Below, piece by piece: positions 5,980-62,785 of a DNA stretch of 64,000 nucleotides (positions are counted from its first letter, which is position 1; each line of letters opens with the position of its first letter). The DNA comes from Octopus sinensis (taxonomy: Eukaryota), in the NCBI RefSeq assembly GCF_006345805.1, contig NC_043005.1, positions 83,948,001 to 84,012,000 of the forward strand, read 5' to 3'. Below the pieces are notes generated by a model, which searched no databases, was not told where the DNA came from, and worked only from the letters and a program-made list of their open reading frames with translations. The translations under genes were made by a program, and so were the position numbers.

Positions 5980-6500
5980 GTGGGAGAGAGAGAGAAGGAT
6001 AGAGAAGAGAAAGAGAGAGAGAATAGAGAGAATAGAGAAGAGAAAGAGAGGGAGAATAGAGAAGAGAAAGAGAGAGAGAATAGAGAAGAGAAAGAGAGAG
6101 AGAATAGAGAAGAGAAAGAGAGAGAGAATAGAGAAGAGAAAGAGAGAGAGAAGAGACAGAGAGAGAGAGAGAACAGAGAAGAGAAAGAGAGAGACAAGAG
6201 ACACAGAGAGAGACAGAATAGAGAAGAGAGAGAGAGAAAGAGAGAAGAGAAAGAAAGAGAAAGAAGAGAAAGAGAGAGAGAATAGAGAAGAGAAAGAGAG
6301 AGAAATAGAGGAAAGAAAGAGAGAGAGAGAAGAGAAAGAGAGAGAGAACAGAGAAGAGAAAGAGAGAGAGAGAGAGAATAGAGAAGAGAAAGTGAGAGAG
6401 AATAGAGAAGAGAAAGAGAGAGAGAGAAATAGAGAGGAGAGAGAGAAATAGAGAAGAGAGAGAGAAATAGAGAAGAGAAAGAGAGAGAGTATAAGAGAGA
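5980..6500. repeat. Purine-only (GA)-rich minisatellite, ~21-22-nt unit gagagagaatagagaagagaaa
   Basis: Direct inspection. Confidence 0.9.
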
Positions 6501-7064
6501 CAGCCTGTGTGTATATATATGTGTATGTGCATATTTGTGTTCACATCATGTTGGATGATTTTTGTTTTTGTAATTAATATAATGATTTAATATTTATTTA
6601 TTTATTTATTTATTATGTAAAGCAGTTGTTTGGAGTGTCTTAATTTCATCCCATGCGATCAATTTGTCTGAAATGTTTAAACGAATATCTGATGTTGGAA
6701 ATGTCACGGTTGACTGGTTTGATATGATACCAATCTGTTGATAAAATGTTAATGGCTTGCACATGTCTTCATTGAGATGTCTGTGGTTAAAACTCACAGC
6801 ATCACACAGCTCGTATGGCCCTCACCAGTGCTTTACCATTTCTAGAACTGAAACCCATAACTCTCACTGGCTCAGTCCACCTAGTTACAAATAGACACCA
6901 TGGATAAATTCATCTCATTTCTGTAAGTAGGGGTGACTGTGTGCCATTATCATCATTGATAGTGAAGATGCAGGCATAAGACATGAAGGAGATGTGGACC
7001 CTGCAAGCCGAAATGATGGCACTCTATTTAGGAGAGCAGAAACTCTTCATCAATGTCATCATTG

Positions 7065-7585
7065 CCACCACCACCAGTAGCGCCACCACCCCCACCATTG
7101 CTGCTGCCACTATCACCAGCACCAGCATCACCAGCACCACCACCAGTGCCACCACCACCAGTGCCACCACCACCAGTGCCACCACCACCAGTGCCACCAC
7201 CACCAGTGCCACCAACACCAGTGCCACCACCACCAGTGCCACCACCACCAGTGCCACCACCACCACCAAACCCCCCACCATTGCTGCTGCCACCATCAGC
7301 ACCAGCACCATTACTATCACCACCGCCACCACTGCCGCTACCACCACCACCATCACCAGCAGTAGCAACAGCACCACCACCACCACCACTACCACTACCA
7401 CTACCACCACTACCACTACCACTACCACCACTACTGCTACCACCTGTGCCACTATCACTGCCGCCGCTGCCACCGATGTTGCCACCACCACTGCAGCCAC
7501 CACCACTGCCGCTGCCACCAGCACCAGCACCAATAGCAGAAGCAGCAGCAGTAGTACAACCACCACCACCACCACCACTGCCTTA
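7065..7585. repeat. (ACC)-based compound micro/minisatellite (15-nt unit accaccaccagtgcc)
   Basis: Direct inspection. Confidence 0.9.
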
Positions 7586-7829
7586 CCATAGAGGAGGTAT
7601 ATGGCTACCCTGCATTATATAAGGGTGGGGAAGGTAGTAGAAATGGGAAGAAGAATACAGTGATCCCATGCCATATCGCAGTTCACCGATCGTGGTTCAC
7701 CAATCACGGTTTATTATTTAAGCTTATGTCAATTCCTCCATGGTGTTATTTTGCATTTATAATAAAATAAATATATACAAATTATAAAGATAAAAACAAT
7801 AAAAAAAATATACAGGACAGTCCTGTTTC

Positions 7830-11405: not shown

Positions 11406-12119
11406 TCATCATCATCATCATTGTCACATTATACCTTCTATACTGGTATGGGTTGGACAGTTTGACAGGAGCTGGTCAGGCATGAGCCTGCACCAGATTT
11501 CTGCATCTATTTTGGCAGGGTTTTTATGGGTGGATGCCCTTCCTAACACCAACGACTCAGTGGGGTGGACTATATGTATATATATATATCTTTGTGTCTG
11601 AGTTTGTCACACACCACTAGTACCAATACCACCACCACCACCTGACAACTGGTGTTAGTATGTTTATGTTCCAGTAACTTAGCAGTTTAGTAAATGAGAC
11701 TGATAGAATAATATTTTTTTAAATTTCATCTAGTTTCAGCTCATGAGCTGTGGCCACGCTGGGGCACCGTGATATAAGAACATAAGTCCTGGGATCGATT
11801 TGTTTGTCTAAAAATTCTTGAAGGAGTGCTCCAGCATGGCCACAATCTAATGAGTGAAAGAAATAAAAGAATAAAAGAATTTGTTGACTTAAGAGGAAAT
11901 AACACAAATGAAGTAGTTTGATGGTGTTATTTCAGCATTTAAAGTGCGATAAGAAAGAGGAGGAAGAGGAGGAGGGGAGGAGGAGGAGGAGGGAGAAAAG
12001 GAAAATGGAAAAGAATGTGAGATGGGAAAAGAAAAGAATAAAAGCAGAGGATAAAAAGAGAAAGAGGAAAAGGGGGAAAGAGTAGAGGAAAGAAAGAGAA
12101 AAGAAGCGAATTGCAGTGT

Positions 12120-12351
12120 ATGTATAAATGTATGTATGTGCATGTGTATTATGTATGTGCATGTGTGTCTGTGTGTGTATGTCCATATATATGTGTATAT
12201 ATATATATGTATATGTGCATATGTATGTATATATATATATGTATGTGTGTGTATGTATATATACATATGTATGTATGATGTGTGTATATATATATATACA
12301 TGTGTATGTATGCATATATATATGTATATATATATATATATGTATGTGTGT

Positions 12352-12388
<37 letters not shown>

Positions 12389-12515
12389 ATGTATATATAC
12401 ATATGTATGTATGTATGTATGCATATATATGTATATATATGTGCATATATATATGTATATATATATGTATGCATATATATATATATATATATATGTGCAT
12501 ATACATATGTATGTA

Positions 12516-12575
<60 letters not shown>

Positions 12576-12593
12576 CATATACATATGTATGTA

Positions 12594-12637
<44 letters not shown>

Positions 12638-12645
12638 ATATATAT
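12120..12645. repeat. Long compound (TA)n/(TG)n microsatellite (similar tracts at 2740-3135, 34385-34500, 34815-35180, 45820-46140)
   Basis: Direct inspection. Confidence 0.95.
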
Positions 12646-13054
12646 TCTAAAGTGGTAAGAACTATTTTCTAGTTTAGATTGCATGTGTTGTTTCAGATTC
12701 TAAAATTACAAAGTCTGCAATACAAAATATTTTAGTAGGATATCAGTGACCCAACTTCGCCCCACCCCTCCACCTCCACCACCTTTCTCTTTCTCTTTGC
12801 TTTTAACTAAAAAAAAATAATAAATAAAAGAAAACGAAAAAAATAACAATAAATACTAAAAGGAAAAAAAACAAAATGGCAGTTGTTATGTTTCGTGTAA
12901 CATTCAAATATGTGTCGGGTCAGATTTGCGGGCATGCACTGTTGCAGCGCACTGCTGCATTCAACATTCATCGGTATATTCCTGGGTTGTCCTGGGGAAT
13001 CCCTTCGGTAGAGTTTCAGTTAGTTCTCATCTCCACAAAGTCCATCTACATCTG

Positions 13055-24534: not shown

Positions 24535-24704
24535 GCGTAGGAGTGGCTGTGTGGTAAGTAGCTTGCTTTTAAACCACATGGTTCCAAGTTCAGACCCACT
24601 GCGTGGCACCTTGGGCAAGTGTCTCTTACTATAGCCTCGGGCTGACCAAAGCCTTGTGAATGGATTTGGTAGACAGAAACTGAAAGAAGCCCATCGTATA
24701 TATG

Positions 24705-24737
<33 letters not shown>

Positions 24738-24982
24738 ATGTGTGTGTGTGTGTATGTGTGTGTGTGTGTATATGTTTGTGCGTCTGTGTTTGTCCTTCAT
24801 TATCGCTTGACAACTGATGCTGGTGTGTTTACATACCCATAACTTAGCAGTTCGGCAAAAGAGACCGATAAAATAAGTACTAGGCTTACAAAGAATAAGT
24901 CCTGTGGTTGATTTGCTTGACTAAAGGCAGTGCTCCAGCATGGCCACAGTCAAATGACTGAAACAAATAAAAGAGAGTAAGA
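24535..24982 (+). mobile_element. SINE family A
   Basis: Full-length. Confidence 0.85.
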
Positions 24983-25821: not shown

Positions 25822-26590
25822 AAATGGCACAGCTGTGTCATAAGAAGTTTCCTTCCTAACTACATAGTTCTGAGTTCAGTCCCACTGTATGGCACCTTGG
25901 GCAAGTGTCTTCTACTGTACCCACCTTGGGCTGACCAAGCCTTGTGAATGGATTTGGTAGGGAAAAACAGAAAGAAGCCTGTCGTATATCTTTATATATA
26001 AAGCTGAAGTTGTCTGTGTATGGCAGGTTTGGTAGCCTTCAACTAACACTATCTCCTCCGAGACCCTGCAGCACAAGTTGACCAAAATAGAGAGTATGAT
26101 AGAAGAAGGCTTATTCTTCATTCCATAGAAGATAAAATTCAAATTGGACCATGTTAACACCAAAAATTATTTACATCAAAAAGGTGCTTTTTTTCTATGA
26201 AAATCCCTATTTTTTACGATTTTTTTACTGCTGTGTCGCCATTTTTCGGTGTATTTCAACCAGAAAATGTTCACTTAAAGAGAATAACAAGCTACATAAT
26301 GCAAAATTTTTACTTTTCAAAAATTCCAATTCTAAAGGGTCGAAACAAACCCGAGCAATGCCGAGCGATACTGCTAGTATATATATATAAGTATACTTAT
26401 GTGTGTGTGTGTCTTTGCGTTTGTGCTTGTCCCCTCCACCATCACTTGATGACTGATGTGGTGTGTTTACGTCCCTGCAACCTAGCAGTTCAGCAAAAGA
26501 AACCAATAGAATAAGTACCAGGCTTACAAAGAATAAGTCCCGGAGTTGATTTCTTTGACTAAAAGGTGGTGCTCCAGCATGGCCAGAGCT
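25822..26590 (+). mobile_element. SINE family A interrupted by a Helitron
   Basis: 5' half to ~25988; 3' half resumes at 26378. Confidence 0.8.
25989..26377 (+). mobile_element. Non-autonomous Helitron
   Basis: A|TC...ccgagcaatgccgagcgatactgCTAG|T; inserted at an AT site with no TSD. Confidence 0.85.
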
Positions 26591-31401: not shown

Positions 31402-32645
31402 TCAGGTCATTAAGAATGAAATGTCCGATTTTCTTAAGCACCAAGTTTGACAGTCATTAACTCTAATGTTTTATGCTGACAATTCTTTGTTTTACAACAT
31501 TGAGGGGTTCCATCATCACTTTTTGAAATTCAATTCATGGTATCTCATTATATTGTGAGTTTTCTCTTGTAAATCAGTTTTTGTGAACCCATGGATAGAT
31601 CAAAAATTCGTGTTATGAATATGAGTTCCATCATGGAACCAATGCATCCCAGACAGCTCGAAACATCAATGGGATGTTTGGTGAAGATGTGGCAAATAAG
31701 TACACTGTACATCAATGGTTTGGGAAGTGCCAGTCTGGTGACTTTACTCTTGAAAATCAGCCCCGTGGTAGACCTGAAACCAAGGTGGATAATGATGAGA
31801 TGGAAACTGTAGTGGAAGCAGATACATCTCAAACTACGTGTGAGTTAGCAGCAAGGTTTGATGTTTTGATTCTAACTGTATTGGACCATCTGAAACAAAT
31901 CGACAAGATAAAGAAGCTGGACAAGTGGGTATCACACAAACTGAATGAGCCTCAAATCACACATCGTTTTGAAACTTGCTGTTCTTTTTGCATTGTATTG
32001 TTATGTGTGATAAAAAATGGATTCTTTTCAACAATAGCAAGTATTCTGCATGGTGATTGGATAGAGATTAAGTGCCAAAACACAATCCAAAAAAGAATAT
32101 TCACGAAAAAGGCTAATAGTGTCCGTTTGGTGGTGCAGTGCTGATGTCATCCACTACAGTTTCATAGGACCAGATAAGTCAGTTACAGCGGATGTATACA
32201 TCAACGAATTGGATGAAATGATGAGTGAACTTGCAATTAAGTAACCAAGATTGGTCAATAGAAACAGGCCAATTCTCTTGCAAGACAATGCTCGACCACA
32301 TGTTTCACAAAGAACGCTGCTCAAGTTACAGGAACTGAACTTGGAAGTACTCTGCCATCCACCATATTCACCAGACCTTGCACCAGCTGACTATCACGGA
32401 TTCCAGGTATTAGACAACTTTTTGCAATGAAAAATCTTAAGAAGATGCAAAAACAGTCTTTATTGATATCATCACCTCTTGCTCTCCAGAATTCTTCACT
32501 GCTGCCATAAATAAGCTACCAATAAAATGGCAAAATTGTGTTGATGATTCAGGAGCATACTTTGATTAACTGCATTGCTTTTTGTTGAGATAAAGTAAAA
32601 TGAACTTTCAGTTCAAAATCGGACACTTCATTCTTAATGACCTGA
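31402..32645 (+). mobile_element. Full-length decayed mariner (DD34D) transposon
   Basis: TA-flanked ~30-bp TIRs tcaggtcattaagaatgaa(a/g)tgtccgatttt; fragments MDRSKIR, GRP, KWVSHKL, QDNARPH, YSPDLAPADY; many stops and frameshifts. Confidence 0.9.
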
Positions 32646-34623: not shown

Positions 34624-35202
34624 AAATCAAAAGCATAGAGTGAGTGATGAAGGGAAACAGCTAGTAAGAGAGAAAATATATATATAAACAGAAAAATGGT
34701 TTGGAAACAGGTGGCAATGAAGTTCTAGGGGGAGGAGAGAGAGAGCAGGTGTGTACGTGCTGGTATAGGTGTGTCTCTGTGCCTGGAAGTATAGTAGCAT
34801 AGGTTAGTGGGGATGTATATGTTTTATGTGTGTGTGTGTGTATATTATATGTATGTATATATGTGTGTGTGCGTATATATATATGTATGTATATATATGT
34901 GTGTGTGTGTGTATATTATATATATGTATATGTGTGTGTGTATATATATATGTATGTATATATATGTGTGTGTGAGTGTGTGTATATTATATGTTTGTAT
35001 ATATGTGTGTGTATATATTATATATGTATATATAATATATATATATATATATGTGTGTATGTTTGTGTATGTATGTGTATATATATATATATATATATGC
35101 ATATATGTATGCATGTATATATATATATATATATATATACATATACACATGCAAACATATATGTATACACACACACACACAGCTAATATAGATATTTTTC
35201 AA

Positions 35203-35560
35203 AAAGATCTTCTAAGCAATGCAGGTGAGATGTTAAGCAAAATATGTGAGGTGATGCCAACAAATAAAGACAAGAAAGTATCATATCACCTTGCATAGGT
35301 TGTTTATAAGGTTTCTCTTGTACTTCAGGAAATTTTCCCCTTATCAAATACATCAGAATGGCCTGCCAATAATGATAATTTTTCTCTGAACTCTTGGATT
35401 ATTTTGTATCATATATTTGATAAGGGGAAGCTTTTCCGAAATATTATAGAAGCATTAGACAGCCTCTATATGGTGATAAAATATCTTGCCTTGATGTTAT
35501 TGGCATCACTTTACATATTTTACCCAAATTTTCTTACTTGCATTGCTTAAAGGTCTTTTT
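35203..35560. mobile_element. Old fold-back MITE
   Basis: 35203..35355 is a diverged reverse complement of 35400..35560. Confidence 0.6.
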
Positions 35561-38635: not shown

Positions 38636-38782
38636 GACAGGCTTCTTTCAGTTTCCGTCTACCAAATCCACTCACAAGGCATTGGTCGGCCCGGGGCTAT
38701 AGCAGAAGACACTTGCCCAAGATGCCACACAGTGGGACTGAACCCGGAACCATGTGGTTGGTTAGCAAGCTACTTACCACAC
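38385..38782 (-). mobile_element. SINE family A, low-divergence copy
   Basis: CpGs retained; full-length. Confidence 0.88.
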
Positions 38783-41700
38783 AATACATACACAGATTAA
38801 TAGATAAATAGATGGAGTGGTCAGGACTGGAATGCCGTTGATCATAGTTTGGCTTCTTCATAGTTCTTTAAACTGCAAGAAATAGCAGACATCTCTCTCA
38901 AATCACAACCTAGTATCTGAAGTAAAGTAGAACATGTTAACTAATATTCTTGATACACTAAGGATGAAAAAAAGGCAGAATAGTCAGGTCTGCAATCATC
39001 ATCATCATCGTCAACTTTTAATTACAGTCTTCCATGCTGACATGGGTCGGATGATTTGACAGGATCTGATGAACCCTGTTTTGGCAAGATTTCTATGGCC
39101 GGATGCTCTTCATAATGCCAACAACTTTACATAGTATACTGGGTTGTGCATTGTTCATGGCACCAGCACTTGTGAGGTCACCATGAAGCCCACAAGACAA
39201 AGATTCCCTTTGACAGAGTTGGGCAACAGTAGAGAGGGAGGCAGCTTTTATGCTAGGAGACAAGAGGTTAAGGTATGAAAAAAAAATGGGGCCAAGACAG
39301 TGGTATAGAGGAGCTAGATAGTTACTTGCATAATAGAAGAGTGGTTGTAATACACATAATAATAGGAATAGGAGACCAGGCCTTTTCAGAGAGAGGATTG
39401 AGTGCTGACTAAGCAACAACTACAAAAGAAACAACAAAAAATGCTTCAGTAATGTAATAAGCACACAGTAATCTCATAATCAAAATAATCTGTTAATTAT
39501 TTCATATTATCTGGAATGGAATAATTAGCTTTGTTATCAATTCATTAGGACACAAATTATATTCAACCTTAATTTTGTCACTCCTTAGCAACAGATTTCA
39601 ACTTTTTAACTCCTTTGATACTAAACCCACCGAAGAATGCCTCTGATTTTACCATTCAAACTTTCTGCTTTTAAAATGATCTAAAAATAAAACCTTCCAT
39701 CAGAATTCCAGGTTAATTTATGTTCCAAACACCAGATTGACCCTTTTAATACCAGCACACCTGAGATAGCCCCTGGTTTTAAAATACAAATCTCTTGTAC
39801 TGAAGTAATCTAAATTAAAACCATCCATCAAAATACCATATTAATTTATGTTCCAAATATCAGATTAAGAATGACAAAAGTTGTTTTACTAAATTCTTCA
39901 TTTTTTGAAAATCAATTAATACAAAGTCAGTGCTATTTTGTTACCATACAGAAATATGGTAACAAAAGGGTTACTCTTCCCTGAACATTGCAGAAGATAT
40001 TAGTCATTATAATCACCCATAGAAGAGAGAAAGAGATGCAGGTCCCTTGATAGGTTTTGAACTACAAATCTATCACTTTGTAGGTGACTGTGTTACAAAG
40101 AATCTAACATTATATTATTTGAAATTAAGATAAATTATTTCAACAAGATTAATTTATCTCTGCAAAATAATTCAGTCATTTTGTTATTTGTCTCTAGCAT
40201 GATAAGATACTTTATATATCCTCAACATAGTGAGGCATCTTGATTCGATGTCTGCATTAAAATCCTAACTGTTAATTCATCATAAAAATTTCTTAGAAAT
40301 CAACCAGGGTCTTAAAGCTTCAGTATAATCTGACAGATTTACTGTTACTGCCTGTGTACACATACATCAGATGTATGTGTATGCATGCATATATGTATAT
40401 TTTGGAGTTTGCCACACACATCGAAGTATATACATTATCTATGTGACTATATTTCATGGTATGTGCCATACACATGAAATGTTTAGTGTTATAAATAAAC
40501 ATTGAAGATAATTATGGATATGTACTTGCATAGCAAGTAACCTGAAGATAATTGAAGGTAATTGTTTCACTTAATATTTGAACACAATAAACATGACATA
40601 ATTACGACTATAAATGATCTTGACATTTTGACAATCTACAAATATAAATAATCCAGCCAAGCTGTTACTACTCACTTTTGACTGTAATAATTTAACCCCA
40701 AATCAGGCCTGATTTTGTAAGCCTAATGATCAAAGCTTATTCTAGCCATCACATGAAGATCTTTTCAGACAGTGTATTTTGGATTACTTTATCCGCTGCA
40801 TCCTTTCTTTTTCAGGACAATAAGTATGTGATTTGTGTGAGATTGATTACGCTTTCTGATAGGCCTGATGAACATATAGAGGCTACATTGCTACATTGCT
40901 ACATTGCAACATTGGATTTTGGGTTGTGTTCCCTGTAGCTTTTACCACACAAGAAATTCTACAAGAATACAACTTGGCAAAGCACGGGGTACCATACTAT
41001 AGCAGTAACATGATTTTGAGCTGTAAGATAGCACCATTTAGCCAGTTTAGAAAAGCTGCTTCATTCATAATTTTAGTTTTAGGGTCAACCATTATTTCTA
41101 AATGAATCTTTACATTTTTATGCAGTATTTATTTCAAACATTGTTTAAAGGTATTGTATGTCTGACGTTCGTTATTTAGTATAATGTTTAAAACATTATG
41201 TTTCATTACCCTTATTTAATAATGACTACCCTACTAATATCAGAATTAATAGCAGCAAATTAGATTTACAGAGTTCTGGAGGCTATAGAATATCATGTTA
41301 TTTTGAATTTAGATGCAACAACAAGGACAAAATGTTACCATGATGTTTAGAAAGCGAAGAACATTTACAGTGCTGTCTGATATGTTATAAAAAAATATTT
41401 AATGATTAAGATGAAAATAGATTTGATTTCAGAGGATGCAATATAAAAAGCTGAATCTGATGTAAAACCTGAGAACTTTAGAAATTTGCAACTACATCAT
41501 ACATCTGTCAGCACAAGGGCTTAGTGGAAGCGGCCATATTGTAGATTAGTAACATTAGCTGCCTGCATAACGAACAAACAATTTATATAAAACATTTAGA
41601 GGAGGCTGTATATAATAAATAACTTATGGCAAGGATGACTGAATATAACATATGTATGTGTATATATGAAAAGAAATGCATAAAAGAGATGCATCAGTGA

Positions 41701-41842
41701 AGCATTATGAGGATAAGAATATAGGATACAAGATAAACTCAATGTGAAAGCTGTTGCGGATAACCATGATGATATCTATTGTACAGTAATATATATATAT
41801 ACATATATATATGTCTGTGTGTGTATAAAAGATGGCGAAATT

Positions 41843-42880
41843 TTACCAGTTTTCAAACCTTCTAGAAATCATTTTAAAAAACATTTCATTATGCGGCCGA
41901 AAAAATTTCCGTAGTTTTGTTTTTACATACTCCTGCACTTTAACATGTTGCCGTCCTTTAGAGTCTGGTAAACATCGATTAATGAATCCTTTTATGCAGT
42001 AAAATTTCTTATCAGGGTCAAAGTAATAGTCCTTTTCTGATATTTTGTGCTCTAAGTGGAGGAATTTTTCAATTTCAACAATTTCCTGAAATGGATTACG
42101 TCGAAAATTATCTCCGTCGACAATATGAATTTGTGAAAGATTAAAGTATTTCAGCCAGTTGGCCATATGTTTGTCATACAGAGAACGTTCTGTGGCAGCA
42201 AATGATGGTTTTACTATTTTTGTGGCTGGGTCAATTGCAAGTTCTTCAAATGTTGGGTATGAAGAATTTCTGACTAATTTACCCCAAATTTGGGTGTAAT
42301 CAGAAATAGTTCTCTCAACAGGCTCACGTACAATCAAAAGCAGTTTAATGGATTGGTTCATTTTTTTCACAGATTCTGGGACATGTTTTTTTACAAAATA
42401 AGCAGGGGTTTTCTCGATGGTTATCTGATTTGGGAAAGAATACGGCATGCGTTTCCTGTACCAATTAAGGCCACGCTTGTAATTATTATCAAAGAAATGA
42501 ACTTCTGTTGAAGCAATAGCAATGTTGGGATGAATGTCCAGAAAATGAATGAGAGCCCCAGTACCTCCTTTGCGAACTCCGATAATAATGCACTGAGGAA
42601 GATACCTGCTCGTGTGGGGATAACGATGAAATCTGTGGCGGATCTTGGGACGAATGCTGTAGTCTTCATGCTTAATTTCTTCCAATTTGGGCAAAGTTTT
42701 GAGTTCTGTTCTAAAGTTGAATAAGTAACTGTTGGCAAAGAACGTCTGAGCGCATGTAAAAATGATTAAACCAACAGCACAAATGGTAAAAATGATGAGA
42801 GTCAGTTTCTTGTATTGATTAATGTAAAATTGATTGGTCATCAATACGAATATATTGGTTGCCGTGGTTTTGCAACTCAT
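41843..42880 (-). CDS. HS3ST1/5-like: Heparan sulfate glucosamine 3-O-sulfotransferase, HS3ST1/HS3ST5-like (type II Golgi membrane protein), whole CDS in one exon
   Basis: 345-aa intact ORF. N-terminal TM segment (LTLIIFTICAVGLIIFTCA), 5'-PSB LPQCIIIGVRKGGT, EVHFFD, ITIEKTPAYF, 3'-PB LLLIVREPVERTISDYTQ, FYC...RCLPDSKGR (disulfide + KGR), LRKFFRPHN. In-frame TGA just upstream fixes the start at 42880. Confidence 0.95.
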   Translation of the reverse strand: MSCKTTATNIFVLMTNQFYINQYKKLTLIIFTICAVGLIIFTCAQTFFANSYLFNFRTELKTLPKLEEIKHEDYSIRPKIRHRFHRYPHTSRYLPQCIIIGVRKGGTGALIHFLDIHPNIAIASTEVHFFDNNYKRGLNWYRKRMPYSFPNQITIEKTPAYFVKKHVPESVKKMNQSIKLLLIVREPVERTISDYTQIWGKLVRNSSYPTFEELAIDPATKIVKPSFAATERSLYDKHMANWLKYFNLSQIHIVDGDNFRRNPFQEIVEIEKFLHLEHKISEKDYYFDPDKKFYCIKGFINRCLPDSKGRQHVKVQEYVKTKLRKFFRPHNEMFFKMISRRFENW

Positions 42881-42902
42881 GGTACAAGAACAATATCAGC
42901 AT
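42819..42902 (-). other. Out-of-frame upstream ORF (27 aa) overlapping the HS3ST start codon
   Basis: ATG at 42902, 22 nt upstream of the main ATG; MLILFLYHELQNHGNQYIRIDDQSILH* ends at 42819. Confidence 0.6.
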
Positions 42903-42904
42903 AG

Positions 42905-42957
42905 CTGAAAAAGAAAATAAAAAAAGAGAAAGATTAAAGAGAGAAGAAAAAGAAGTC
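42905..42957 (-). promoter_or_regulatory. Splice acceptor (polypyrimidine tract + CAG) for the HS3ST coding exon; exon starts at 42904
   Basis: Minus strand reads cttctttttcttctctctttaatctttctctttttttattttctttttCAG|ctatgctg..., 24 nt upstream of the ATG. This implies upstream non-coding exon(s) beyond 42905. Confidence 0.8.
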
Positions 42958-43021
42958 ATGGATTACAATCTGTTAAAAATGGTTAGAATTAAAGGAGGTT
43001 TTTAAAATTTCCTAATAGCCA

Positions 43022-43608
43022 GGCACAGGTGTGACTGTGTGGTAAAAAAATTTGCTCCCCAACCACATGGTTGAGGGTTCAGTCCCACTCTGTAGCACCT
43101 GGGCTAAGTGCCTTCTACTGTAGCCTTGGGCCAACCAAAACCTTGTGAGTGGATTTGGTAGATAGAAGCTGAAAGCCCAATGTATATGTGTGTGTGTGTG
43201 TGTGCGTGTGTGTTTGTGTGTGTGTGTATATATATAGGCACAGGAGTGGCTGTGTGGTAAGTAGCTTGCTTACCAACCACATGGTTCCGGGTTCTGTCCC
43301 ACTGCATAGCACTTTGGGCAAGTATCTTCTATAGCCTCGGGCCAACCAAAGCCTTGTGAGTGGATTTTGTAGACGGAAACTGAAAGAAGCTGATCATATA
43401 TGTATGTATGTATGTGTGTGTTTGTTATTTGTGTCTGTCCTCCCACAATCGCTTAACAACCGATGTTGGTGTGTTTATGCCCCCTGTAACTTAGTGGTTT
43501 GGCAAAAGTGACCAATAATTACTAGGTTAACAAAGAATAAGTCCTGGGGTCGATTTGTTCGACTAAAGGTGATGCTCCAGCATGGCCACAGTCAAATGAC
43601 AAAAAGAA
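43022..43608 (+). mobile_element. SINE family A: 5' half copy followed by a full copy
   Basis: Heads at ~43022 and ~43238. Confidence 0.82.
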
Positions 43609-44249: not shown

Positions 44250-44450
44250 ACGTACATTTATTAAAACTGAAAAATCTCCACAGATTGTTACTTAGAAGTT
44301 CATAACAACTGCCTGAGGGAGAGGAATATGAAACTGAGTAAGAGTTTTGTGATGATTTTCCAGCTTTAATAAAAAAGCATATTACTCTACCGTCAGTATT
44401 TGAGTACTATTTTTTCTACCTTCTTTCACATTTATGTGCTTACTCATGTG
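44250..44450 (+). mobile_element. Diverged short copy of the same PLE 3' end
   Basis: Shares agcatattactctacc...tatttgagtact...tcacatttatgtgcttactc with 16800-16870 and a relic hammerhead at 44307..44346. Confidence 0.6.
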
Positions 44451-44865
44451 TGTATAAATATAGTGTGTGTGTATGTGTGCGTGTATAAATATAGCATGTG
44501 TATATAAATATAGTGTGTGTGTGTATACATATAGTGTGTGTGTGTGTATGTGTGCGAGTATAAATATAGCATGTGTATATAAATATAGTGTGTGTGTGTA
44601 TACATATAGTGTGTGTGTGTGTGTGTATGTGTGCGAGTATAAATATAGCATGTGTATATAAATATAGTGTGTGTGTGTGTATACATATAGTGCATGTGTA
44701 TAAATATAGTGTGTGAGTATGTATAGTGTTTGTGTACAAATATAGTATGTGTGTATAAATACAGAGTGTGTGTGTTTGTATATACTGTGTGTGTGTGTGT
44801 GGAAATATTGTGTGTGTGTGTGTGTGTATGTGTAAATATAGTGTGTGTGTGTGTGTGTGTGTGTA
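44450..44865. repeat. TG/TA minisatellite with a higher-order ~60-70-nt unit
   Basis: gtataaatatagcatgtgtatataaatatagtgtgtg... repeated about three times. Confidence 0.8.
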
Positions 44866-45818
44866 TTTGTCCCCTGTGACTGTGTGACAACCAGTATTGG
44901 TGTGTTTACGTCCCTGTAACTTAACAGTTCAGCAAAAGAGACCAACAGAGAATTAATAGTAGGCTTAAAAAAGAAGTACTGATATGTTTGATTAAAATTC
45001 TTCAAGGCAGTGGTGCCCCAGCATGGCCACAATCTAATGACTGAAACAAGTAAAAGAAGACAAAAAGAAAAGAATAACAGTAAATTGATGGTGGTAACCG
45101 CGACGAAGATGGTGATGATGATACTGATGGTGGTAATGGTGGTGGTGCCGCAGCTGACGACCGCAATAGTGATGATGGTGGTGGAAGTGATGATGATAAT
45201 ACAGAAAAAAGTTGTAACGATGAGTGTGATGATGATGCTGATATTGATGATGGGAGTGGTTGTGATGATAGTGATGGAAACGATGATAGGAAGGTGGCCA
45301 TGGCAACGATAATGATAACGATGATAGCAATTGTAATTATAAAATATTTATAGTCTTCATTTCGAGTAATTGCGCAATTTACCAATTTTTAAGAATTGGT
45401 TTAAAAGTATTCTTGTTTCAAAGCATATCAAGAACATATCACATTGCCATTGGAAAATATTATTCTGAATGTCGGCACAAGTGCAGCTGTGGTGGTGAAG
45501 AAGTTAGTTCACTCCCTAGCCATGCTGTTTCGGGTCCCTGGGGCAAGTGTCTTCTAGTGTATATATGTATATATATGTAATTATGTGTAAACATGTATAT
45601 GTACATGTGTGGGTTCATATATATATATATATATATATATAACTAATGTAGGATAAAATTTTTTTCGGGAAAAAAATTTTATCAATGGCCAGCATATCAA
45701 AAAATACCTTTAAAGGTTAAATTTATACATAATTTACAAGATAAGGGCAAAAGAAAAATTCTAGTGCTAAATATGCCAAAACAAAAAAATGTCGATAACC
45801 ATTATAATATAAATTATA

Positions 45819-47324: not shown

Positions 47325-47622
47325 TAGTACTTATTCTATTGTGCCCTTTTGCCGAACTGCTATGTTACGGGGACATAAACACACCAGCATCGGTTGTCAA
47401 GCGATGTTGGGGGGACAAACACAAAAATACAAACATATGCACACACATACATATATATACGACAGGCTTCTTTCAGTTTCCATCTACCAAATCCACTCAC
47501 AAGGCTTTGGTTGGTCCAAGGCTATAGTAGAAGACATTTTCCCAAGGTGCCACACAGTGGGAATGAACCCGGAACCATGTGGTTGGTAAGCAAGCTACTT
47601 ACCACACAGCCACTCCTGTGCC
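47325..47622 (-). mobile_element. SINE family A (3'-truncated)
   Basis: Consensus match. Confidence 0.8.
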
Positions 47623-53507: not shown

Positions 53508-53905
53508 GTGCAGGAGTGGCTTCCCAACCACATGGTTCCAAGTTCAGTCCCACTGCATGTCACCTTGCGAAAGTGTTTTCCACTATAGTCTTGACTTGAC
53601 TGACTTGACAGCATTCACCCAGGGTGGGTTGAGCTGGCTTCATTCATCCTCAATGCTGCATCTCTCACAAACACTAGCCAGGCCTGATGATTTGAGGCTA
53701 AGACTATAGTCTTGGGCTAACCAAAACCTTGTGAGTGGATTTGGTAGACGGAAACTGAAAGAAGCACATCATGTATATGTATGTATATGTTTGTGTGTGT
53801 GTCTTTGTCCTCTACCACAGCTTGACAATTAGTGTTGGTTTGTTTACATCACCATAACTTAGCAGTTTGGCAAAAGAGATCAATAGAATAAATACTAAGC
53901 TTAAA
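53508..53905 (+). mobile_element. SINE family A with internal insertion
   Basis: Consensus match at both ends. Confidence 0.7.
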
Positions 53906-59183: not shown

Positions 59184-62100
59184 TCTTTTTTATTGGCCAC
59201 AAGGGCTGACACGCATGATTACATAAAGGGTCAAGACAGGACGAAAGGTTACAAAGGGTTTTGCCGTTTTTTTTAAAAAACATCGAGTAAAAATCTTTAT
59301 AACAACTTATAAAATTCAACAATGAAAAACTCCCAAAAGGGGGAGACGTCTCGAAAGGTTCCTGGTGGAAAAAACCCTACAAAAGCCAACGGGAGCCTGG
59401 TCTAAAAAGGGGGTGTAGAGAGTCCCCTTTCTTCTCCTTTTGTATTACCTTTTTGAAATCACAGGCGAAACCTGAGAACTGGTCCATTTATACAGGCCAG
59501 TCTCGCACAATTCACCCACCTTTCATAAAACTTGCTATCGGACAGCACTTTCCTCTCTAACCTCATCTTCCTTTTCAAGTGAAACTTGAAAAAGTTGATG
59601 AGGCCTTGACCAAAGAGGAAAGTGTCTGACTTTAGCCCTTTCAAACGAGTCCACCACACGACTTCTTTCGCCACAGCCACAAGGCACAAGAAAACGGCCT
59701 CGCCCTCCTTGTTAAAGGAGGTCGGCGGGGCAATCTTCACTATGGATTCGGCCGATAGTCGGATCCGTCCTACACGTGACAGTAGCTGTTCGACATAAAC
59801 CCATATTTCAGCAATACTCGGGCACTGGACGAGTGCGTGCAGAACGGTTTCGTCGTCCTGGCAACACCTCGGGCAGGCCCGGCTGACTGCACTTCCGTGC
59901 CGGTAGAGTTTATCTCGAACAGGCAGAGCCCCTCGGTAGCACTGCCAGGCGAGAGACCTCTGGAAATTATCCATCGGCCCCGGCCCGAAAGTCCTCCCGA
60001 ACAGACCGCTCAGTTCGTCGTCTTCAACGCCTAGAGTTTCCCCGAGAACGTCGTCGCATTTTTCCTCCACTAACCCTCTATAGAACGCTAGAGTGGAGCT
60101 GTAACCGACCGCATTGCCCGCCTGGTGGAGGGCGGAGAGGGCTTGACGGCACTCGAGGTGCCAAGCGCCCTTTCTCGGTCTACGTTTGATCCAGGTCTGC
60201 AGCTCCGTCAAAGAGACGAGCTGCGGAAAATCGCGTCTGACAAAAGACGACCACACCTGTTCACCGTCTAGGAAGCGCTTGAGATGCCGCAGCCTGAGCG
60301 CATGTCTGCGCAACAGCAACCACGGCATTCCAAGGCCTCCGTTCAGCGGTCGTTGACAGCAGATGGATCGCCTGACCAGTGGCACCTGACCCTTCCACAA
60401 AAAGTCGAAGAGCAGGCGTACCAGCTTGGCCAACCAGCGGTCGGGACAAGGGACGACGGTCAAGCGGTAAAAGATGACGGATGCGATGTACGCATTCGCC
60501 ACCTCCGCTCGACCTTTCAGGGACAGCTTCCTCTCGGCCCATTTCTGGGTGAGACGTGCCACCCTGCTCGTCACCTCTTCCCAGTTCTTATCCACCTGGA
60601 GGTCCGGACCGAACCAGACCCCGAGCAGCTTAACGGGTCCGTCTGTCCAGCGCCCTACGACGCTGTTGGACGGCATGGGCTTGCCTCTCCAGGTGCCCAG
60701 TTGCAAGCCCACAGACTTTTCCGCGTTAATCTTTGCCCCTGTCACCGCTTCGTACTGGTTTAGCGTCTCGCCAATCAGGCCAATGTGCCTGTGGCTCGAC
60801 ACCACCACGGTGACGTCGTCGGCATAAGCAGACACGCTGTTTCCGCCTCCTAGATCGCGCGGGATGCCCCTCAAAGCCTCCAACTTGCGCAGTAATGGCT
60901 CGAGAGTCAAAATGTACAAGAGGGAGGAGAGAGGGCATCCTTGGCGGACCGAACGCGAGATGTCGAACGGTTCCGAAAGGTGACCGTTCACCCGTATCAC
61001 CGAGCAGATGTTGCTGTATAAAGCAGCGATCCACCCGCGGAAGACTGGACCGAAGCCGGCTGCCTTGAGGACAGCTGCCAGGTACCGATGGTCGACCCTA
61101 TCGAAGGCTTTACTCTGATCCAAGTTGATCAAAGCCCCACCCGCGCCAGCGTCGTTACCCACCCTCTCTATGATGTAGCGCATGAGATGGAGGTTGTCGT
61201 GTATCGACCTGGTCGGCACGGCGCATGTCTGCGTCCCGCCGACCAGCTTGTCCACGACAAGCGCCAATCTCTTGGCTAGCACCTTGGCCAAAATCTTCAA
61301 CTCTGCATTGAGCAGAGTGATGGGCCGGAAATTCCCTATAACGTCCCCCTTGTTTGGGTCCTTCTTTAGCAAAGCCACCACCCCTCGACAGACAAAAGCA
61401 GGAATTCTCCCGTTTTGCTGCCAGTTGCAGTAGACGTTTGCCAACAGGTCCGCAAACAAGTCTGGCATTGAAAAGTAAAGCTCGTAGGGCAGACCATCCA
61501 AACCCGGCGATCTACCTCTCGTGCAACTCTTCATCGCTTCCTGTACTTCCCAGGCAGATATCGGTCCTTCGCAGCACTCTGCCTCGCTGTCCGAGAGTTG
61601 CGGCAGTCCGTCCAGGTACACACCGAAGTCTGTACCGTTGGTGTCCGTTCCACCGCTCGTCCCAAACAGTTGAGCAAAGCGCCGCTGAAGCACCGTACAC
61701 ATCTGCTTCGGTTGGGTAACCTCGCGCCCGTTCTGGTCCACCAAAGACCGAATGGTTGCTCTGTTGCCTCGCTTCGCCTCCGCCACGCGGGCCCATCGAG
61801 CGGCTCTAGTCCCCTCCCCGCTTAGCGAACGTGCCTTAGCTCTGACAACGCAGCCTTCGTGTTTGGCGTCGAAGTGTTGGTCGAGGGCCAACCTTGCCGC
61901 CAACACGTCGGTCGCGATGCCAGTGTCAAGAGCCTCGTCTAGTTTCTTAACTAAATCCCGCTCTCTCTTCCTACGTTCAATAGCTAGAGTCTTACTATAC
62001 CTAATCGACTCTACTCTAATTGCTCTCTTGAGGGCAAACCACCAGTTGTTGTTGATGATTGCCCCCGTGAGCGCCCGCTTAACTAGTAAACTAATCCGGT

Positions 62101-62785
62101 CTCTGTAAGCTTTGCACGCCGTTAACGACGCGTTCAGCTTCCAGTAGCCGGGTCCCTGTCTATGTAGCCTATCTAAGTCGACCGTACAGATCACTAATTT
62201 GTGGTCCGTATATTCGACTAGGTGGAATTGTGGACACCCTACGCTGTCCTTATCCGCTGGCCTACAAAACACTCTATCTAAGTACGATCTAGACGACCCG
62301 ATGCGGTTTGTCCAAGTCCACATTGGCACATTCGGGTTGTCTAGTCGAAACCTGTCGGACAGCTGAAAGCGGCCGAGTAGGTTGGCGAGGCTCTTGCACC
62401 CTCCCCCTCTCCTATCAGACGCTCCCCTGCCCACCCGATCGAAACGTTCGTCTAAGACAGCGTTCCAATCCCCAACTAGTACTAGAGTGCGTGACGTTCC
62501 CAGGAAAACTTCCAGACGTTTGAAATAATCCGACTGCCCTGCTCCTGTCGGAGCGTAGGCAGCCAGCAGTCTGAAAGCACCGCCGTCACTACCGTCCACG
62601 TCGAGGACTACCAACTTACCTTCCGGATCCAAGAAGACTGTCCTTATTTTCAGGTCCAGGCCCTTCCGAAACAACACCGCAGTACCACCACCGCCCGCTC
62701 CCGGCCGACACGGAGATAGAAATATCTCGTATCCGCCGAAAAGGGCTGCGAGTTCCTGCGGGTCGGAGAGCCTGGTTTCCCTAAT
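59184..62785 (-). mobile_element. Tx1/L1-clade non-LTR retrotransposon, 5'-truncated, young copy
   Basis: Much more GC-rich than the flanks; uninterrupted ORF2; 3' UTR ends in AATAAA + aaaagaa at ~59184-59194; no ORF1. Confidence 0.9.
59459..62677 (-). CDS. LINE ORF2: APE endonuclease (N-terminus missing) + reverse transcriptase + C-terminal CCHC zinc knuckle
   Basis: 1072 aa with GDWNAVL, SYLDRVF, YTDH (APE); SPGLDGLP, FRPITLLNAELKIL, DQSKAFDRV, VRQGCPLS, AYADDV (RT); CPRCCQDDETVLHALVQC. The frame stays open upstream to 62797 (IRETRL motif) with no ATG. Confidence 0.92.
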   Translation of the reverse strand: MLFRKGLDLKIRTVFLDPEGKLVVLDVDGSDGGAFRLLAAYAPTGAGQSDYFKRLEVFLGTSRTLVLVGDWNAVLDERFDRVGRGASDRRGGGCKSLANLLGRFQLSDRFRLDNPNVPMWTWTNRIGSSRSYLDRVFCRPADKDSVGCPQFHLVEYTDHKLVICTVDLDRLHRQGPGYWKLNASLTACKAYRDRISLLVKRALTGAIINNNWWFALKRAIRVESIRYSKTLAIERRKRERDLVKKLDEALDTGIATDVLAARLALDQHFDAKHEGCVVRAKARSLSGEGTRAARWARVAEAKRGNRATIRSLVDQNGREVTQPKQMCTVLQRRFAQLFGTSGGTDTNGTDFGVYLDGLPQLSDSEAECCEGPISAWEVQEAMKSCTRGRSPGLDGLPYELYFSMPDLFADLLANVYCNWQQNGRIPAFVCRGVVALLKKDPNKGDVIGNFRPITLLNAELKILAKVLAKRLALVVDKLVGGTQTCAVPTRSIHDNLHLMRYIIERVGNDAGAGGALINLDQSKAFDRVDHRYLAAVLKAAGFGPVFRGWIAALYSNICSVIRVNGHLSEPFDISRSVRQGCPLSSLLYILTLEPLLRKLEALRGIPRDLGGGNSVSAYADDVTVVVSSHRHIGLIGETLNQYEAVTGAKINAEKSVGLQLGTWRGKPMPSNSVVGRWTDGPVKLLGVWFGPDLQVDKNWEEVTSRVARLTQKWAERKLSLKGRAEVANAYIASVIFYRLTVVPCPDRWLAKLVRLLFDFLWKGQVPLVRRSICCQRPLNGGLGMPWLLLRRHALRLRHLKRFLDGEQVWSSFVRRDFPQLVSLTELQTWIKRRPRKGAWHLECRQALSALHQAGNAVGYSSTLAFYRGLVEEKCDDVLGETLGVEDDELSGLFGRTFGPGPMDNFQRSLAWQCYRGALPVRDKLYRHGSAVSRACPRCCQDDETVLHALVQCPSIAEIWVYVEQLLSRVGRIRLSAESIVKIAPPTSFNKEGEAVFLCLVAVAKEVVWWTRLKGLKSDTFLFGQGLINFFKFHLKRKMRLERKVLSDSKFYERWVNCARLACINGPVLRFRL

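What the first reader, a model, noticed from the sequence alone, without database searches (positions are those of the whole stretch)
42545..42580. HS3ST-like enzyme lacks two conserved substrate-binding residues (KGGTRALLE becomes KGGTGALIH)
Seen: G108 (codon GGG, 42557-42559) and H112 (CAT, 42545-42547). Established: in mouse 3-OST-1 these positions are R72 and E76; R72 was needed for activity in mutagenesis. The residues equivalent to R67, K68, E90, H92, D95, K123, Q163, K274, R276 and the disulfide are all intact here. The 'gate' positions are S (3-OST-5-like) and P (H271 in 3-OST-1). Inference: a catalytically competent PAPS-dependent sulfotransferase with a remodelled acceptor site, possibly a paralog acting on a different glycan or HS sequence.
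Basis: partly seen in the sequence, partly recalled or inferred. Interest (0 to 1): 0.7.

Follow-up and report, generated by a model that had tools for sequence, protein, structure and literature searches.

The report
Octopus HS3ST enzyme missing its substrate-clamping arginine
An intact, evolutionarily constrained octopus gene for a heparan-sulfate 3-O-sulfotransferase-like enzyme has replaced the arginine that normally grips the sugar next to the target site with glycine, so it probably still transfers sulfate but recognises its sugar chain differently; this is a modest, untested curiosity in an already annotated gene.

Summary
The sequence facts are correct. A single-exon ORF (window 41843-42880, minus strand, 345 aa) encodes an HS3ST1/5-like type II membrane sulfotransferase. 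Its P-loop reads KGGTGALIH, with G108 = GGG at 42557-42559 and H112 = CAT at 42545-42547.

It is not an assembly error. The same codons occur in O. vulgaris, O. bimaculoides and a fourth, more distant octopod. The gene is under purifying selection (dN/dS about 0.09-0.13).

Only half of the "two conserved residues" claim holds.
- **R72:** Arg in 130/130 close homologues and in 184/213 diverse lineages.
- **E76:** Glu in about half of lineages, and in none of the named mollusc homologues checked.

R72G comes with other octopod-specific changes at conserved columns: R136S, N253D, G257K and P279V. All PAPS-binding and catalytic residues and the disulfide are kept.

Published 3-OST-3 structures show the equivalent Arg166 clamping the carboxylate of the uronic acid next to the acceptor. 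R166E leaves under 1% activity.

The gene looks like the octopod ortholog of the molluscan HS3ST1/5-like gene rather than a new paralog. A fully canonical HS3ST6-like paralog (KKGGTRALLE) co-exists in O. bimaculoides.

The most likely reading is an active sulfotransferase with an altered -1 subsite. Activity and substrate are untested. Interest is modest.

The parts
41843..42880 (-). Complete single-exon CDS (345 aa plus stop) of an HS3ST1/5-like sulfotransferase. [quoted passage not shown]
   Evidence: ORF list. Pfam PF00685, 6.7e-22. PDB 3bd9 at 3e-84 and 1zrh/1vkj at 1e-76. Homologues. No gaps and 96.1% nucleotide identity to O. bimaculoides.
42749..42805 (-). Predicted type II signal-anchor / transmembrane segment (aa 26-44, LTLIIFTICAVGLIIFTCA).
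   Evidence: Kyte-Doolittle maximum of 2.6. The AF2 model has a long helix at aa 17-59.
42545..42574 (-). 5'-phosphosulfate-binding loop and start of helix 1: R103-K104-G-G-T-G108-A-L-I111-H112 (canonical RKGGTRALLE).
   Evidence: Helix 107-114 in the model puts G108 and H112 at i and i+4 on one face.
42557..42559 (-). Codon GGG = G108, in place of the family-wide Arg (R72 in mouse 3-OST-1, R166 in human 3-OST-3).
   Evidence: The nearest relative (cluster 2, locus L001) has CGA = Arg.
42545..42547 (-). Codon CAT = H112, in place of E76. This column is variable in invertebrates.
   Evidence: Cluster 2 has CAG = Gln.
42488..42511 (-). S124 (gate, 3-OST-5-like), then the catalytic E126-V-H128-F-F-D131. 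All are canonical.
42371..42373 (-). S170, in place of an Arg present in 96% of close homologues (R136; VPER becomes VPES).
42005..42019 (-). Beta-hairpin turn D288-P-D-K-K292 in place of the consensus N-x-T-K/R-G. N253D (N in 130/130) removes the conserved NxT sequon. G257K puts a new lysine at a column that is Gly in 98% of close homologues.
   Evidence: Hairpin strands at 285-288 and 293-296 in the model.
41942..41974 (-). C303 (disulfide partner of C295), P305 (second gate position), K308-G-R310-Q-H312-V313. K274 and R276 equivalents are intact. P279V is octopod-specific.
39332..41842 (-). Block downstream of the stop codon that is 94-95% identical to O. bimaculoides, against 84-90% for most other aligned blocks. 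This is probably a long conserved 3' UTR (inferred).

Best explanation
This is the octopod version of the molluscan HS3ST1/5-like Golgi sulfotransferase, a type II membrane protein with a luminal PAPS-dependent catalytic domain.

**Shown**
- The gene is intact in four octopods and under purifying selection.
- It retains the full PAPS-binding and catalytic apparatus: K68, the R151/S159 3'-phosphate motif, E90, H92, D95, K123, Q163, K274, R276 and the C260-C269 disulfide.
- In the octopod lineage it replaced the Arg of the P-loop helix (R72 in 3-OST-1, R166 in 3-OST-3) with Gly. It also changed several other normally conserved positions: R136S, N253D, G257K, P279V and L75I.

**Established elsewhere**
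- In crystal complexes this Arg makes a bidentate contact with the carboxylate of the uronic acid on the non-reducing side (-1) of the acceptor glucosamine. Replacing it abolishes activity on heparan sulfate.

**Inferred**
- The octopus protein is still a sulfotransferase, but its -1 subsite no longer clamps the uronate carboxylate in the canonical way.
- Its preferred acceptor therefore differs from that of canonical 3-OSTs. It could be a different heparan sulfate sequence context or another glycan.
- Canonical 3-O-sulfation in octopus can be supplied by at least one ordinary HS3ST paralog.
For: **Identity and fold**
- Pfam Sulfotransfer_1.
- 3e-84 to 3-OST-5 and 1e-76 to 3-OST-1.
- AF2 model with pLDDT 88, target-normalised TM-score 0.90-0.94 and rmsd 1.1-1.5 A to 3-OST-5, 3-OST-1 and 3-OST-3.

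**Catalytic set**
- Intact throughout.

**Constraint**
- dN/dS is 0.127 against O. bimaculoides (dS 0.135) and 0.092 against a further octopod (dS 0.37).
- The ORF is uninterrupted in four species, with 18 variable residues in 254 catalytic-domain positions.
- The motif codons are identical in all four apart from one synonymous change.

**Rarity**
- Arg in 130/130 close homologues.
- Among 213 deduplicated lineages, 28 lack Arg. Only 4 of these keep all catalytic residues: octopus (G), P0357 (G), P0271 (Q) and P0341 (K).

**Coordinated change**
- 10 of 79 columns conserved in at least 90% of homologues differ in octopods, and all 10 are fixed in all four species.
- Across the family, loss of R72 is associated with loss of N253 (10/28 against 13/185, p = 1e-4) and more weakly with G257 (p = 0.02).

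**Role of the Arg**
- Arg166 of 3-OST-3 is bidentate to the -1 uronate carboxylate, and R166E has under 1% activity (PMC8341778).
- Arg72 of 3-OST-1 contacts the 5-COO- at position -1 (PMC7183009).

**Canonical paralog**
- O. bimaculoides XP_014769153 (HS3ST6-like) has KKGGTRALLE, EPHFFD and GFPC.
- Thirteen OST genes are reported for O. bimaculoides (bioRxiv 10.1101/2020.02.02.930693).
Against: - There are no biochemical, expression or structural data for this protein.
- The Logan contigs carrying it are colinear with the genome, so they do not prove transcription.
- Mutagenesis of the equivalent Arg in mammals gives dead enzymes, not re-targeted ones.
- A new basic or H-bonding side chain (H112 one helical turn from G108, or K292 in the hairpin) could restore ordinary substrate binding. 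I could not measure distances because model coordinates are not returned.
- Sister grouping with the Arg-bearing cluster 2 has only 0.30 NJ bootstrap on the catalytic domain. The timing and polarity of the change rest partly on the full-length tree and on N-terminal similarity.
- The covariation statistics are not corrected for phylogeny.
Confidence: 0.5

Rival explanations
1. Compensated, ordinary HS 3-O-sulfotransferase. The role of the lost guanidinium is taken over by another residue, so the enzyme still 3-O-sulfates heparan sulfate much as 3-OST-5 does. Candidates are H112, which lies one helical turn away on the same helix face and would be partly protonated at Golgi pH, or the new K292 in the adjacent hairpin.
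For: - G108 and H112 both lie on helix 107-114 at i and i+4.
- His at position 76 occurs in 5 of 213 lineages, and 3 of those lack R72 (Fisher p = 0.017). These include Pecten maximus XP_033762153, which has the same G/H pair.
- G257K creates a lysine at a column that is Gly in 98% of close homologues.
- All other acceptor-contacting residues are kept: K123, Q163, R197, K274 and R276.
- Strong purifying selection is compatible with an unchanged essential function.
Against: - The His/non-Arg association rests on three lineages and is not phylogenetically corrected.
- The Pecten protein with G/H has also lost H92 and D95, so it is not evidence for retained activity.
- No distances could be measured.
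- N253D and P279V at otherwise near-invariant positions suggest change rather than simple compensation.
Confidence: 0.25
2. Catalytically inactive or very weak pseudo-enzyme kept for a non-catalytic role, for example binding PAPS or HS, or partnering with or regulating other Golgi HS enzymes.
For: - R166E in 3-OST-3 leaves under 1% activity (PMC8341778).
- Most family members that lack R72 have also lost catalytic or acceptor residues: Q163 in 17/28, H92 in 15/28 and E90 in 6/28. Loss of this Arg often accompanies loss of canonical function.
- Purifying selection alone does not prove catalysis.
Against: - Unlike those relatives, the octopus protein keeps every catalytic and PAPS-binding residue across four species. 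That is hard to explain without catalysis.
- The related NDST sulfotransferase domain works without an Arg at this P-loop position (from memory of the KTGTT motif, not checked here). The side chain would then not be needed for PAPS binding or sulfuryl transfer as such.
Confidence: 0.15
3. Artefact or dead gene: the Gly codon is a sequencing or assembly error, or the locus is a pseudogene.
For: None found.
Against: - Identical GGG codon in three independent genome assemblies plus four Logan contigs of another species.
- Intact 345-346 aa ORFs, no indels and dN/dS about 0.1.
Confidence: 0.01

Closest known systems
Human HS3ST5 / 3-OST-5 (PDB 3bd9, 7scd, 7sce)
   Same: - Best sequence and fold match: 3e-84, 50-52% identity, rmsd 1.2-1.3 A.
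- Same catalytic residues, disulfide and type II anchor.
- Ser at the first gate position.
- RefSeq and ENA name the octopus protein HS3ST5.
   Different: - The octopus protein has Gly for the P-loop Arg and His for the following Glu.
- It has Pro (not Ala) at the second gate position.
- N253D and G257K alter the hairpin.
- P279V and R136S.
- A 2-residue shorter loop after the FFD motif.
Mouse/human HS3ST1 / 3-OST-1 (PDB 1vkj, 1zrh, 3uan)
   Same: - 1e-76, 46-47% identity and the same fold.
- This is the numbering frame for R72, E76, E90 and the other positions.
   Different: - 3-OST-1 has gate residues E88 and H271, where octopus has S124 and P305.
- It has R72 contacting the -1 GlcA carboxylate (PMC7183009).
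- From memory, it is a soluble luminal protein with a signal peptide rather than a membrane anchor.
Human HS3ST3A1 / 3-OST-3 (PDB 1t8t, 6xkg, 6xl8)
   Same: - Same fold, 40% identity.
- It provides the direct structural and mutational evidence for the Arg. Arg166 is bidentate to the -1 uronate carboxylate, and R166E has under 1% activity.
   Different: - It is a B-type enzyme (KKGGTRALLE, EPHFFD, GFPC).
- Octopus has its own canonical member of this type, XP_014769153.
Molluscan HS3ST1/5-like orthologs (Liolophura XP_064604231, Patella XP_050403023, Haliotis XP_046566832, Lottia, Littorina, Ruditapes) and the unnamed 'cluster 2' proteins (P0002, P0124, P0126)
   Same: - Same clade in the full-length NJ tree.
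- Cluster 2 is the nearest relative: 59% identity in the catalytic domain. It is also the best match to the octopus N-terminal stem and transmembrane region (E = 2e-7 among 418 N-termini).
- Position 76 is non-Glu in all of them.
   Different: - All keep Arg at position 72, N253, G257 and P279.
- The octopus lineage carries 29-40 unique changes against 17-24 in cluster 2 (relative-rate test p = 0.005-0.5, depending on outgroup).
- The taxon of cluster 2 could not be determined with these tools.
HS3ST-like proteins that independently lack the Arg (e.g. Pecten maximus XP_033762153 = P0244; P0256, P0273, P0257, P0357)
   Same: - Gly at the R72 position.
- P0244 also has His at position 76.
- P0357 keeps the full catalytic set, as octopus does.
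   Different: - They are not close relatives of the octopus gene (0/200 bootstraps group them).
- Most have additional active-site losses: H92N, D95S, R276L or Q163M.
- None is characterised.

Membership tests
[quoted passage not shown] | Sulfotransfer_1 domain, with closest sequence and fold matches to HS3ST structures rather than to NDST or other sulfotransferases | tested here: met
   PF00685 at 6.7e-22. HS3ST5, HS3ST1 and HS3ST3 at 3e-84 to 6e-62, against NDST at 2e-24. Target-normalised TM-score 0.90-0.94 against 0.77 or less for NDST.
HS3ST family | 5'-phosphosulfate-binding loop with catalytic Lys (K68), and the 3'-phosphate-binding R151...S159 motif (RxPxxRxxSDY) | tested here: met
   K104. 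VREPVERTISDY contains R185 and S193. K, R and S are invariant columns in alignment A1.
HS3ST family | Catalytic base Glu (E90) with H92 and D95 in the E-x-H-F-F-D motif | tested here: met
   E126-V-H128-F-F-D131.
HS3ST family | Acceptor and transition-state residues K123, Q163, K274 and R276 | tested here: met
   K157, Q197, K308 and R310.
HS3ST family | P-loop-helix Arg (R72 in 3-OST-1, R166 in 3-OST-3) that clamps the carboxylate of the uronic acid at position -1 | tested here: not met
   G108 (GGG) in four octopods. Arg in 130/130 close homologues and 184/213 lineages. Role of the Arg from PMC8341778 and PMC7183009.
HS3ST family | Conserved disulfide (C260-C269) in the hairpin region | tested here: met
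   C295 and C303 are invariant columns.
HS3ST family | Conserved Asn of the F-N-x-T hairpin (N253) and the following Gly (G257) | tested here: not met
   D288 where 130/130 close homologues have N. K292 where 98% have G.
HS3ST family (functional, EC 2.8.2.23/29/30) | PAPS-dependent transfer of sulfate to the 3-OH of glucosamine in heparan sulfate | not testable with these tools
HS3ST1/5-type ('A-type') subgroup | Groups with HS3ST1/5-like rather than HS3ST2/3/4/6-like sequences, i.e. E-V/I-H-FFD and GFYC rather than EPHFFD and GFPC | tested here: met
   EVHFFD and KFYC. Nearest PDB hits are HS3ST5 and HS3ST1. Falls in the clade with molluscan HS3ST1/5-like proteins. B-type signatures are listed.

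The most novel reading that the evidence does not exclude
Octopods have converted their HS3ST1/5-type enzyme into a sulfotransferase that no longer needs a uronic-acid carboxylate next to the acceptor. It would then sulfate something other than canonical heparan sulfate, for example a neutral or differently charged glycan, or a cephalopod-specific glycosaminoglycan. Ordinary 3-O-sulfation would be left to the B-type paralogs.

A still more speculative twist is A-to-I RNA editing, which is pervasive in coleoid cephalopods (from memory). Editing H112 (CAU to CIU, read as Arg) or K292 could conditionally change a basic side chain near the lost one. Nothing here supports editing at these sites.
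Probability: 0.2. Interest if true: 0.6.

Novelty: new variant of a known kind. Interest (0 to 1): 0.3.

Why it matters
3-O-sulfation is the rarest heparan sulfate modification and carries the most specific information. The determinants of 3-OST acceptor choice are studied intensively for making defined heparin-like drugs. A naturally occurring, selectively maintained 3-OST that lacks the uronate-clamping Arg but keeps all its catalytic machinery would be useful in two ways. It is a ready-made test of how far that Arg defines substrate specificity. It could also reveal a new acceptor or a new engineering route. The practical weight is limited. The gene is already annotated, and the HS3ST family is expanded in molluscs (13 OST genes are reported for O. 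bimaculoides). About 13% of diverse family lineages also lack the Arg, and no functional data exist for any of them.

Tried and rejected
1. **Assembly error or pseudogene.** Rejected. The codons are identical in four octopods, the ORFs are intact and dN/dS is about 0.1.
2. **Logan contigs L003-L006 as evidence of expression.** Rejected. They are colinear with the genome from 43213 to 41796 and end at microsatellites, so they are uninformative.
3. **E76H as loss of a conserved residue.** Rejected. The column is variable, and none of the named mollusc homologues checked has Glu there.
4. **A shared origin of the Gly with other Gly-bearing homologues (P0244, P0256, P0273, P0257, P0357).** Rejected. 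Bootstrap support for grouping with octopus is 0/200.
5. **Identifying the organism behind cluster 2 (ERZ21867824; SRR29271476 and others) and behind the fourth octopod (SRR11869385-94).** No names are in the databases and no paper mentions the accessions.
6. **A robust test of octopus plus cluster 2 monophyly.** NJ bootstrap on the catalytic domain is only 0.30. No ML software was available. Support comes from the full-length tree and from N-terminal similarity.
7. **The primary structural papers** (Edavettal 2004; Moon 2004 and 2012; Xu 2008). None is held. Roles of R72/R166 and E170 were taken from PMC8341778 and PMC7183009 instead.
8. **Measuring whether H112 or K292 can reach the R72 guanidinium position.** Not possible, because the model's coordinates are not returned.
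9. **A second A-type HS3ST in Octopus.** None appeared among the top 120 hits of two searches. Absence is not proven.
10. **Literature on octopus HS3ST.** Only a gene count was found. The Octopus maya hit concerned galactose-3-O-sulfotransferase.
Full report
**What is there**

The minus strand of the window holds one uninterrupted ORF at 41843-42880, encoding 345 aa.
- It matches Pfam Sulfotransfer_1 at 6.7e-22.
- Among solved structures it is closest to human 3-OST-5 (3bd9, 3e-84). Next come 3-OST-1 (1zrh, 1vkj, 3uan, about 1e-76) and 3-OST-3 (6e-62). The NDST sulfotransferase domain is far behind at 2e-24.
- The P-loop reads R103-K-G-G-T-G108-A-L-I-H112.
- The HMMER alignments place these two residues opposite R72 and E76 of KGGTRALLE.

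- R67 = R103, K68 = K104, E90 = E126, H92 = H128, D95 = D131, K123 = K157, Q163 = Q197, K274 = K308, R276 = R310.
- The disulfide cysteines are C295 and C303.
- The gate positions are S124 and P305.

A hydrophobic segment at aa 26-44 fits a type II membrane anchor. An AlphaFold2 model built on an 83-sequence alignment has mean pLDDT 88, and above 95 over most of the catalytic domain. It superposes on 3-OST-5, 3-OST-1 and 3-OST-3 with target-normalised TM-scores of 0.90-0.94 and rmsd 1.1-1.5 A.

**Whose gene it is, and whether the substitution is real**

- The protein is identical to a database entry on a 109.7-Mb NCBI contig.
- It sits in the same 90% cluster as O. bimaculoides XP_014781917 and a 346-aa protein from four Logan contigs.
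- The window is 96.7-98.3% identical at the nucleotide level to O. vulgaris OX597823.1. It therefore comes from a very close relative, probably O. sinensis. That assignment was not verified.

All four octopods have KGGTGALIH with the same GGG and CAT codons. The only difference in the ten motif codons is one synonymous change.

Nei-Gojobori estimates:

| Comparison with the window | dN/dS | dS |
|---|---|---|
| O. bimaculoides | 0.127 | 0.135 |
| Fourth octopod (Logan) | 0.092 | 0.37 |

There are no indels in the CDS. Only 18 of 254 catalytic-domain residues vary among the four species. This excludes an assembly error or a decaying pseudogene.

The Logan contigs are colinear with the genome and end at microsatellites. 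They say nothing about transcription. The 2.5 kb downstream of the stop codon is 94-95% identical to O. bimaculoides, against 84-90% for most other aligned blocks. That suggests a long conserved 3' UTR.

**How unusual each residue is**

Among the 130 non-octopus sequences from the first homology search, position 72 is Arg in all 130.

A search of 1.84 billion cluster representatives found 758 family members at E of 1e-30 or better. I pooled all retrieved sequences and deduplicated them below 75% identity, which left 213 lineages.
- 184 have Arg at position 72 and 28 do not (K 7, G 6, others 15).
- Most of the 28 have also lost other active-site residues: Q163 in 17, H92 in 15, D160 in 12 and E90 in 6.
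- Only four keep the whole catalytic set: the octopus protein (G), P0357 (G), P0271 (Q) and P0341 (K).

The R-to-G change is therefore rare, and nearly unique in its clean form, but it is not unprecedented. One other Gly-bearing protein is Pecten maximus XP_033762153. It even shares His at position 76, but it has H92N and D95S. These Gly-bearing proteins never group with the octopus clade (0/200 bootstraps).

Position 76 is different. It is Glu in only 102/213 lineages. In the named mollusc homologues it is S (Patella, Lottia), T (Ruditapes), Y (Littorina, Babylonia), Q (Haliotis, Argopecten), N (Potamilus) or R (Liolophura). E76H is therefore not the loss of a conserved residue.

**The change is wider than two residues**

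Of 79 alignment columns conserved in at least 90% of close homologues, the octopods differ at ten, and all ten are fixed in all four species.
- Five are radical changes: R72G, R136S (VPER becomes VPES), N253D (N in 130/130; this removes the conserved NxT sequon), G257K (G in 98%) and P279V (P in 97%).
- In the model, D288 and K292 flank the turn of the hairpin at 285-296.
- G108 and H112 lie on helix 107-114 at i and i+4, so they sit on the same face.

Across the family, loss of R72 goes with loss of N253 (10/28 against 13/185, p = 1e-4) and weakly with change at G257 (p = 0.02). His at position 76 is found in five lineages, three of which lack R72 (p = 0.017). These statistics are not corrected for phylogeny and rest on few lineages. 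They hint that R72, N253 and G257 form one functional unit, and that His76 or Lys257 might partly compensate.

**Evolutionary placement**

- In a full-length NJ tree the octopus clade is sister to an unnamed 'cluster 2' (P0002 from ENA ERZ21867824; P0124 and P0126 from Logan). Both sit inside a clade of molluscan HS3ST1/5-like proteins.
- Cluster 2 reads RKAGTRALLQ, with codons CGA for Arg and CAG for Gln.
- On the catalytic domain alone, bootstrap support for the sister relationship is only 0.30.
- The fast-evolving N-terminal 93 residues of the octopus protein find cluster 2 N-termini as their best matches among 418 (E = 2e-7, next best 0.006).
- I take cluster 2 to be the closest relative, probably a non-octopod cephalopod ortholog. 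Its taxon could not be established.
- Relative-rate counts give 29-40 octopus-specific against 17-24 cluster-2-specific changes, with p from 0.005 to 0.5 depending on outgroup. That is a moderate acceleration.
- The named molluscs each appear in these searches with an A-type gene of this clade. No second A-type protein from Octopus appeared in the top 120 of two searches. Absence is not proven.
- A fully canonical B-type paralog does exist. O. bimaculoides XP_014769153 (HS3ST6-like) has KKGGTRALLE, EPHFFD, EKTPSYF, SDYTQ and GFPC...GKTKGRQHP.
- A preprint counts 13 OST genes in O. bimaculoides (10.1101/2020.02.02.930693).

**What the missing Arg does in known enzymes**

[quoted passage not shown] This is the R72 equivalent. 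R166E has under 1% activity (PMC8341778).
- For 3-OST-1, Arg72 is reported to contact the 5-COO- of the -1 residue (PMC7183009).
[quoted passage not shown] With Glu356 it flanks Arg173, and it moves with different substrates. It is a second-shell, charge-balancing residue rather than a documented substrate binder.
- The primary papers on 3-OST-1 mutagenesis are not held.

**Most likely mechanism**

Shown: the gene is intact and constrained, has a complete PAPS-binding and catalytic apparatus, and has lost the uronate clamp along with remodelling of nearby conserved positions.

Inferred: the protein is still a Golgi sulfotransferase, but its -1 subsite recognises the acceptor differently from canonical 3-OSTs. 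Canonical 3-O-sulfation in octopus can be supplied by at least one ordinary HS3ST paralog.

| Explanation | Confidence |
|---|---|
| Active enzyme with altered -1 subsite | about 0.5 |
| Ordinary specificity retained through H112 or K292 compensation | 0.25 |
| Non-catalytic pseudoenzyme | 0.15 |
| Artefact or dead gene | 0.01 |

Only enzymology, mutants and a substrate complex can separate the first three.

**Comparison with the known, and novelty**

By descent and fold this is a member of the HS3ST family, A-type (HS3ST1/5-like), and it is already annotated as such. It fails one functionally defining feature, the carboxylate-clamping Arg, and two conserved hairpin features, N253 and G257. 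I therefore file it as a variant of a known kind rather than as an ordinary member. 3-O-sulfation of heparan sulfate should not be assumed for it.

The 'competent enzyme with remodelled acceptor site' reading is the best one.

Interest is modest at 0.3. It is a natural, selectively maintained counter-example to a residue thought essential, in a family relevant to heparin engineering. There are no functional data, and the family is already known to be expanded and variable in molluscs.

Noticed in passing
window 59459-62677 (-): Intact 1072-aa ORF of a non-LTR (LINE-type) retrotransposon, with Exo_endo_phos endonuclease, RVT_1 reverse transcriptase and zf-RVT domains.
   Followed up: partly
window 43235-43389, with copies near 1772-1940, 4710-4881, 24572-24745, 25852-25977, 38642-38767, 47429-47622 and 53519-53593: A short interspersed repeat of about 125-200 bp lies just upstream of the sulfotransferase gene and recurs at least eight times in the window at 70-76% identity. 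It is also present upstream of the gene in the fourth octopod.
   Followed up: no
window 39332-41842 (-): The 2.5 kb downstream of the stop codon is 94-95% identical to O. bimaculoides, clearly above the 84-90% of most other aligned blocks. It is probably a long conserved 3' UTR. AATAAA/ATTAAA signals lie at 41403, 41220, 41133 and 39750.
   Followed up: partly
window 5879-7622, 11889-12684, 34807-35298, 44382-45032: Long microsatellite and low-complexity tracts (CA/TA/CT-type repeats) generate spurious ORFs of 150-250 aa on both strands.
   Followed up: no
window 31674-32144 (+): A 156-aa ORF whose N-terminus resembles, by eye, the DNA-binding N-terminus of mariner-type transposases. It gave no Pfam hit at E of 0.001 or better.
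   Followed up: partly
related proteins P0244 (Pecten maximus XP_033762153), P0256, P0273: These HS3ST-like proteins share Gly at the R72 position, Asn for H92 and an EK[ST]SN.FH motif in place of EKTPAYF. This may be a distinct, uncharacterised subfamily of sulfotransferase-like proteins (NJ bootstrap 0.61 for the trio).
   Followed up: partly
related proteins P0034 and P0163 (same 90% cluster, ENA assemblies): Two near-identical 348-aa proteins differ at the R72 position (ARKAGTRALLE against ARKAGTGALLE). This is either a polymorphism or an error in an unnamed mollusc-like species.
   Followed up: no
window 42819-42959 (-): A polypyrimidine tract ending in AG at 42905-42906 lies 24 nt upstream of the start codon and looks like a splice acceptor. 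An out-of-frame upstream ORF starts at 42959 and overlaps the start codon. O. bimaculoides has three RefSeq protein accessions with this identical protein, which would fit alternative 5' UTR exons.
   Followed up: no
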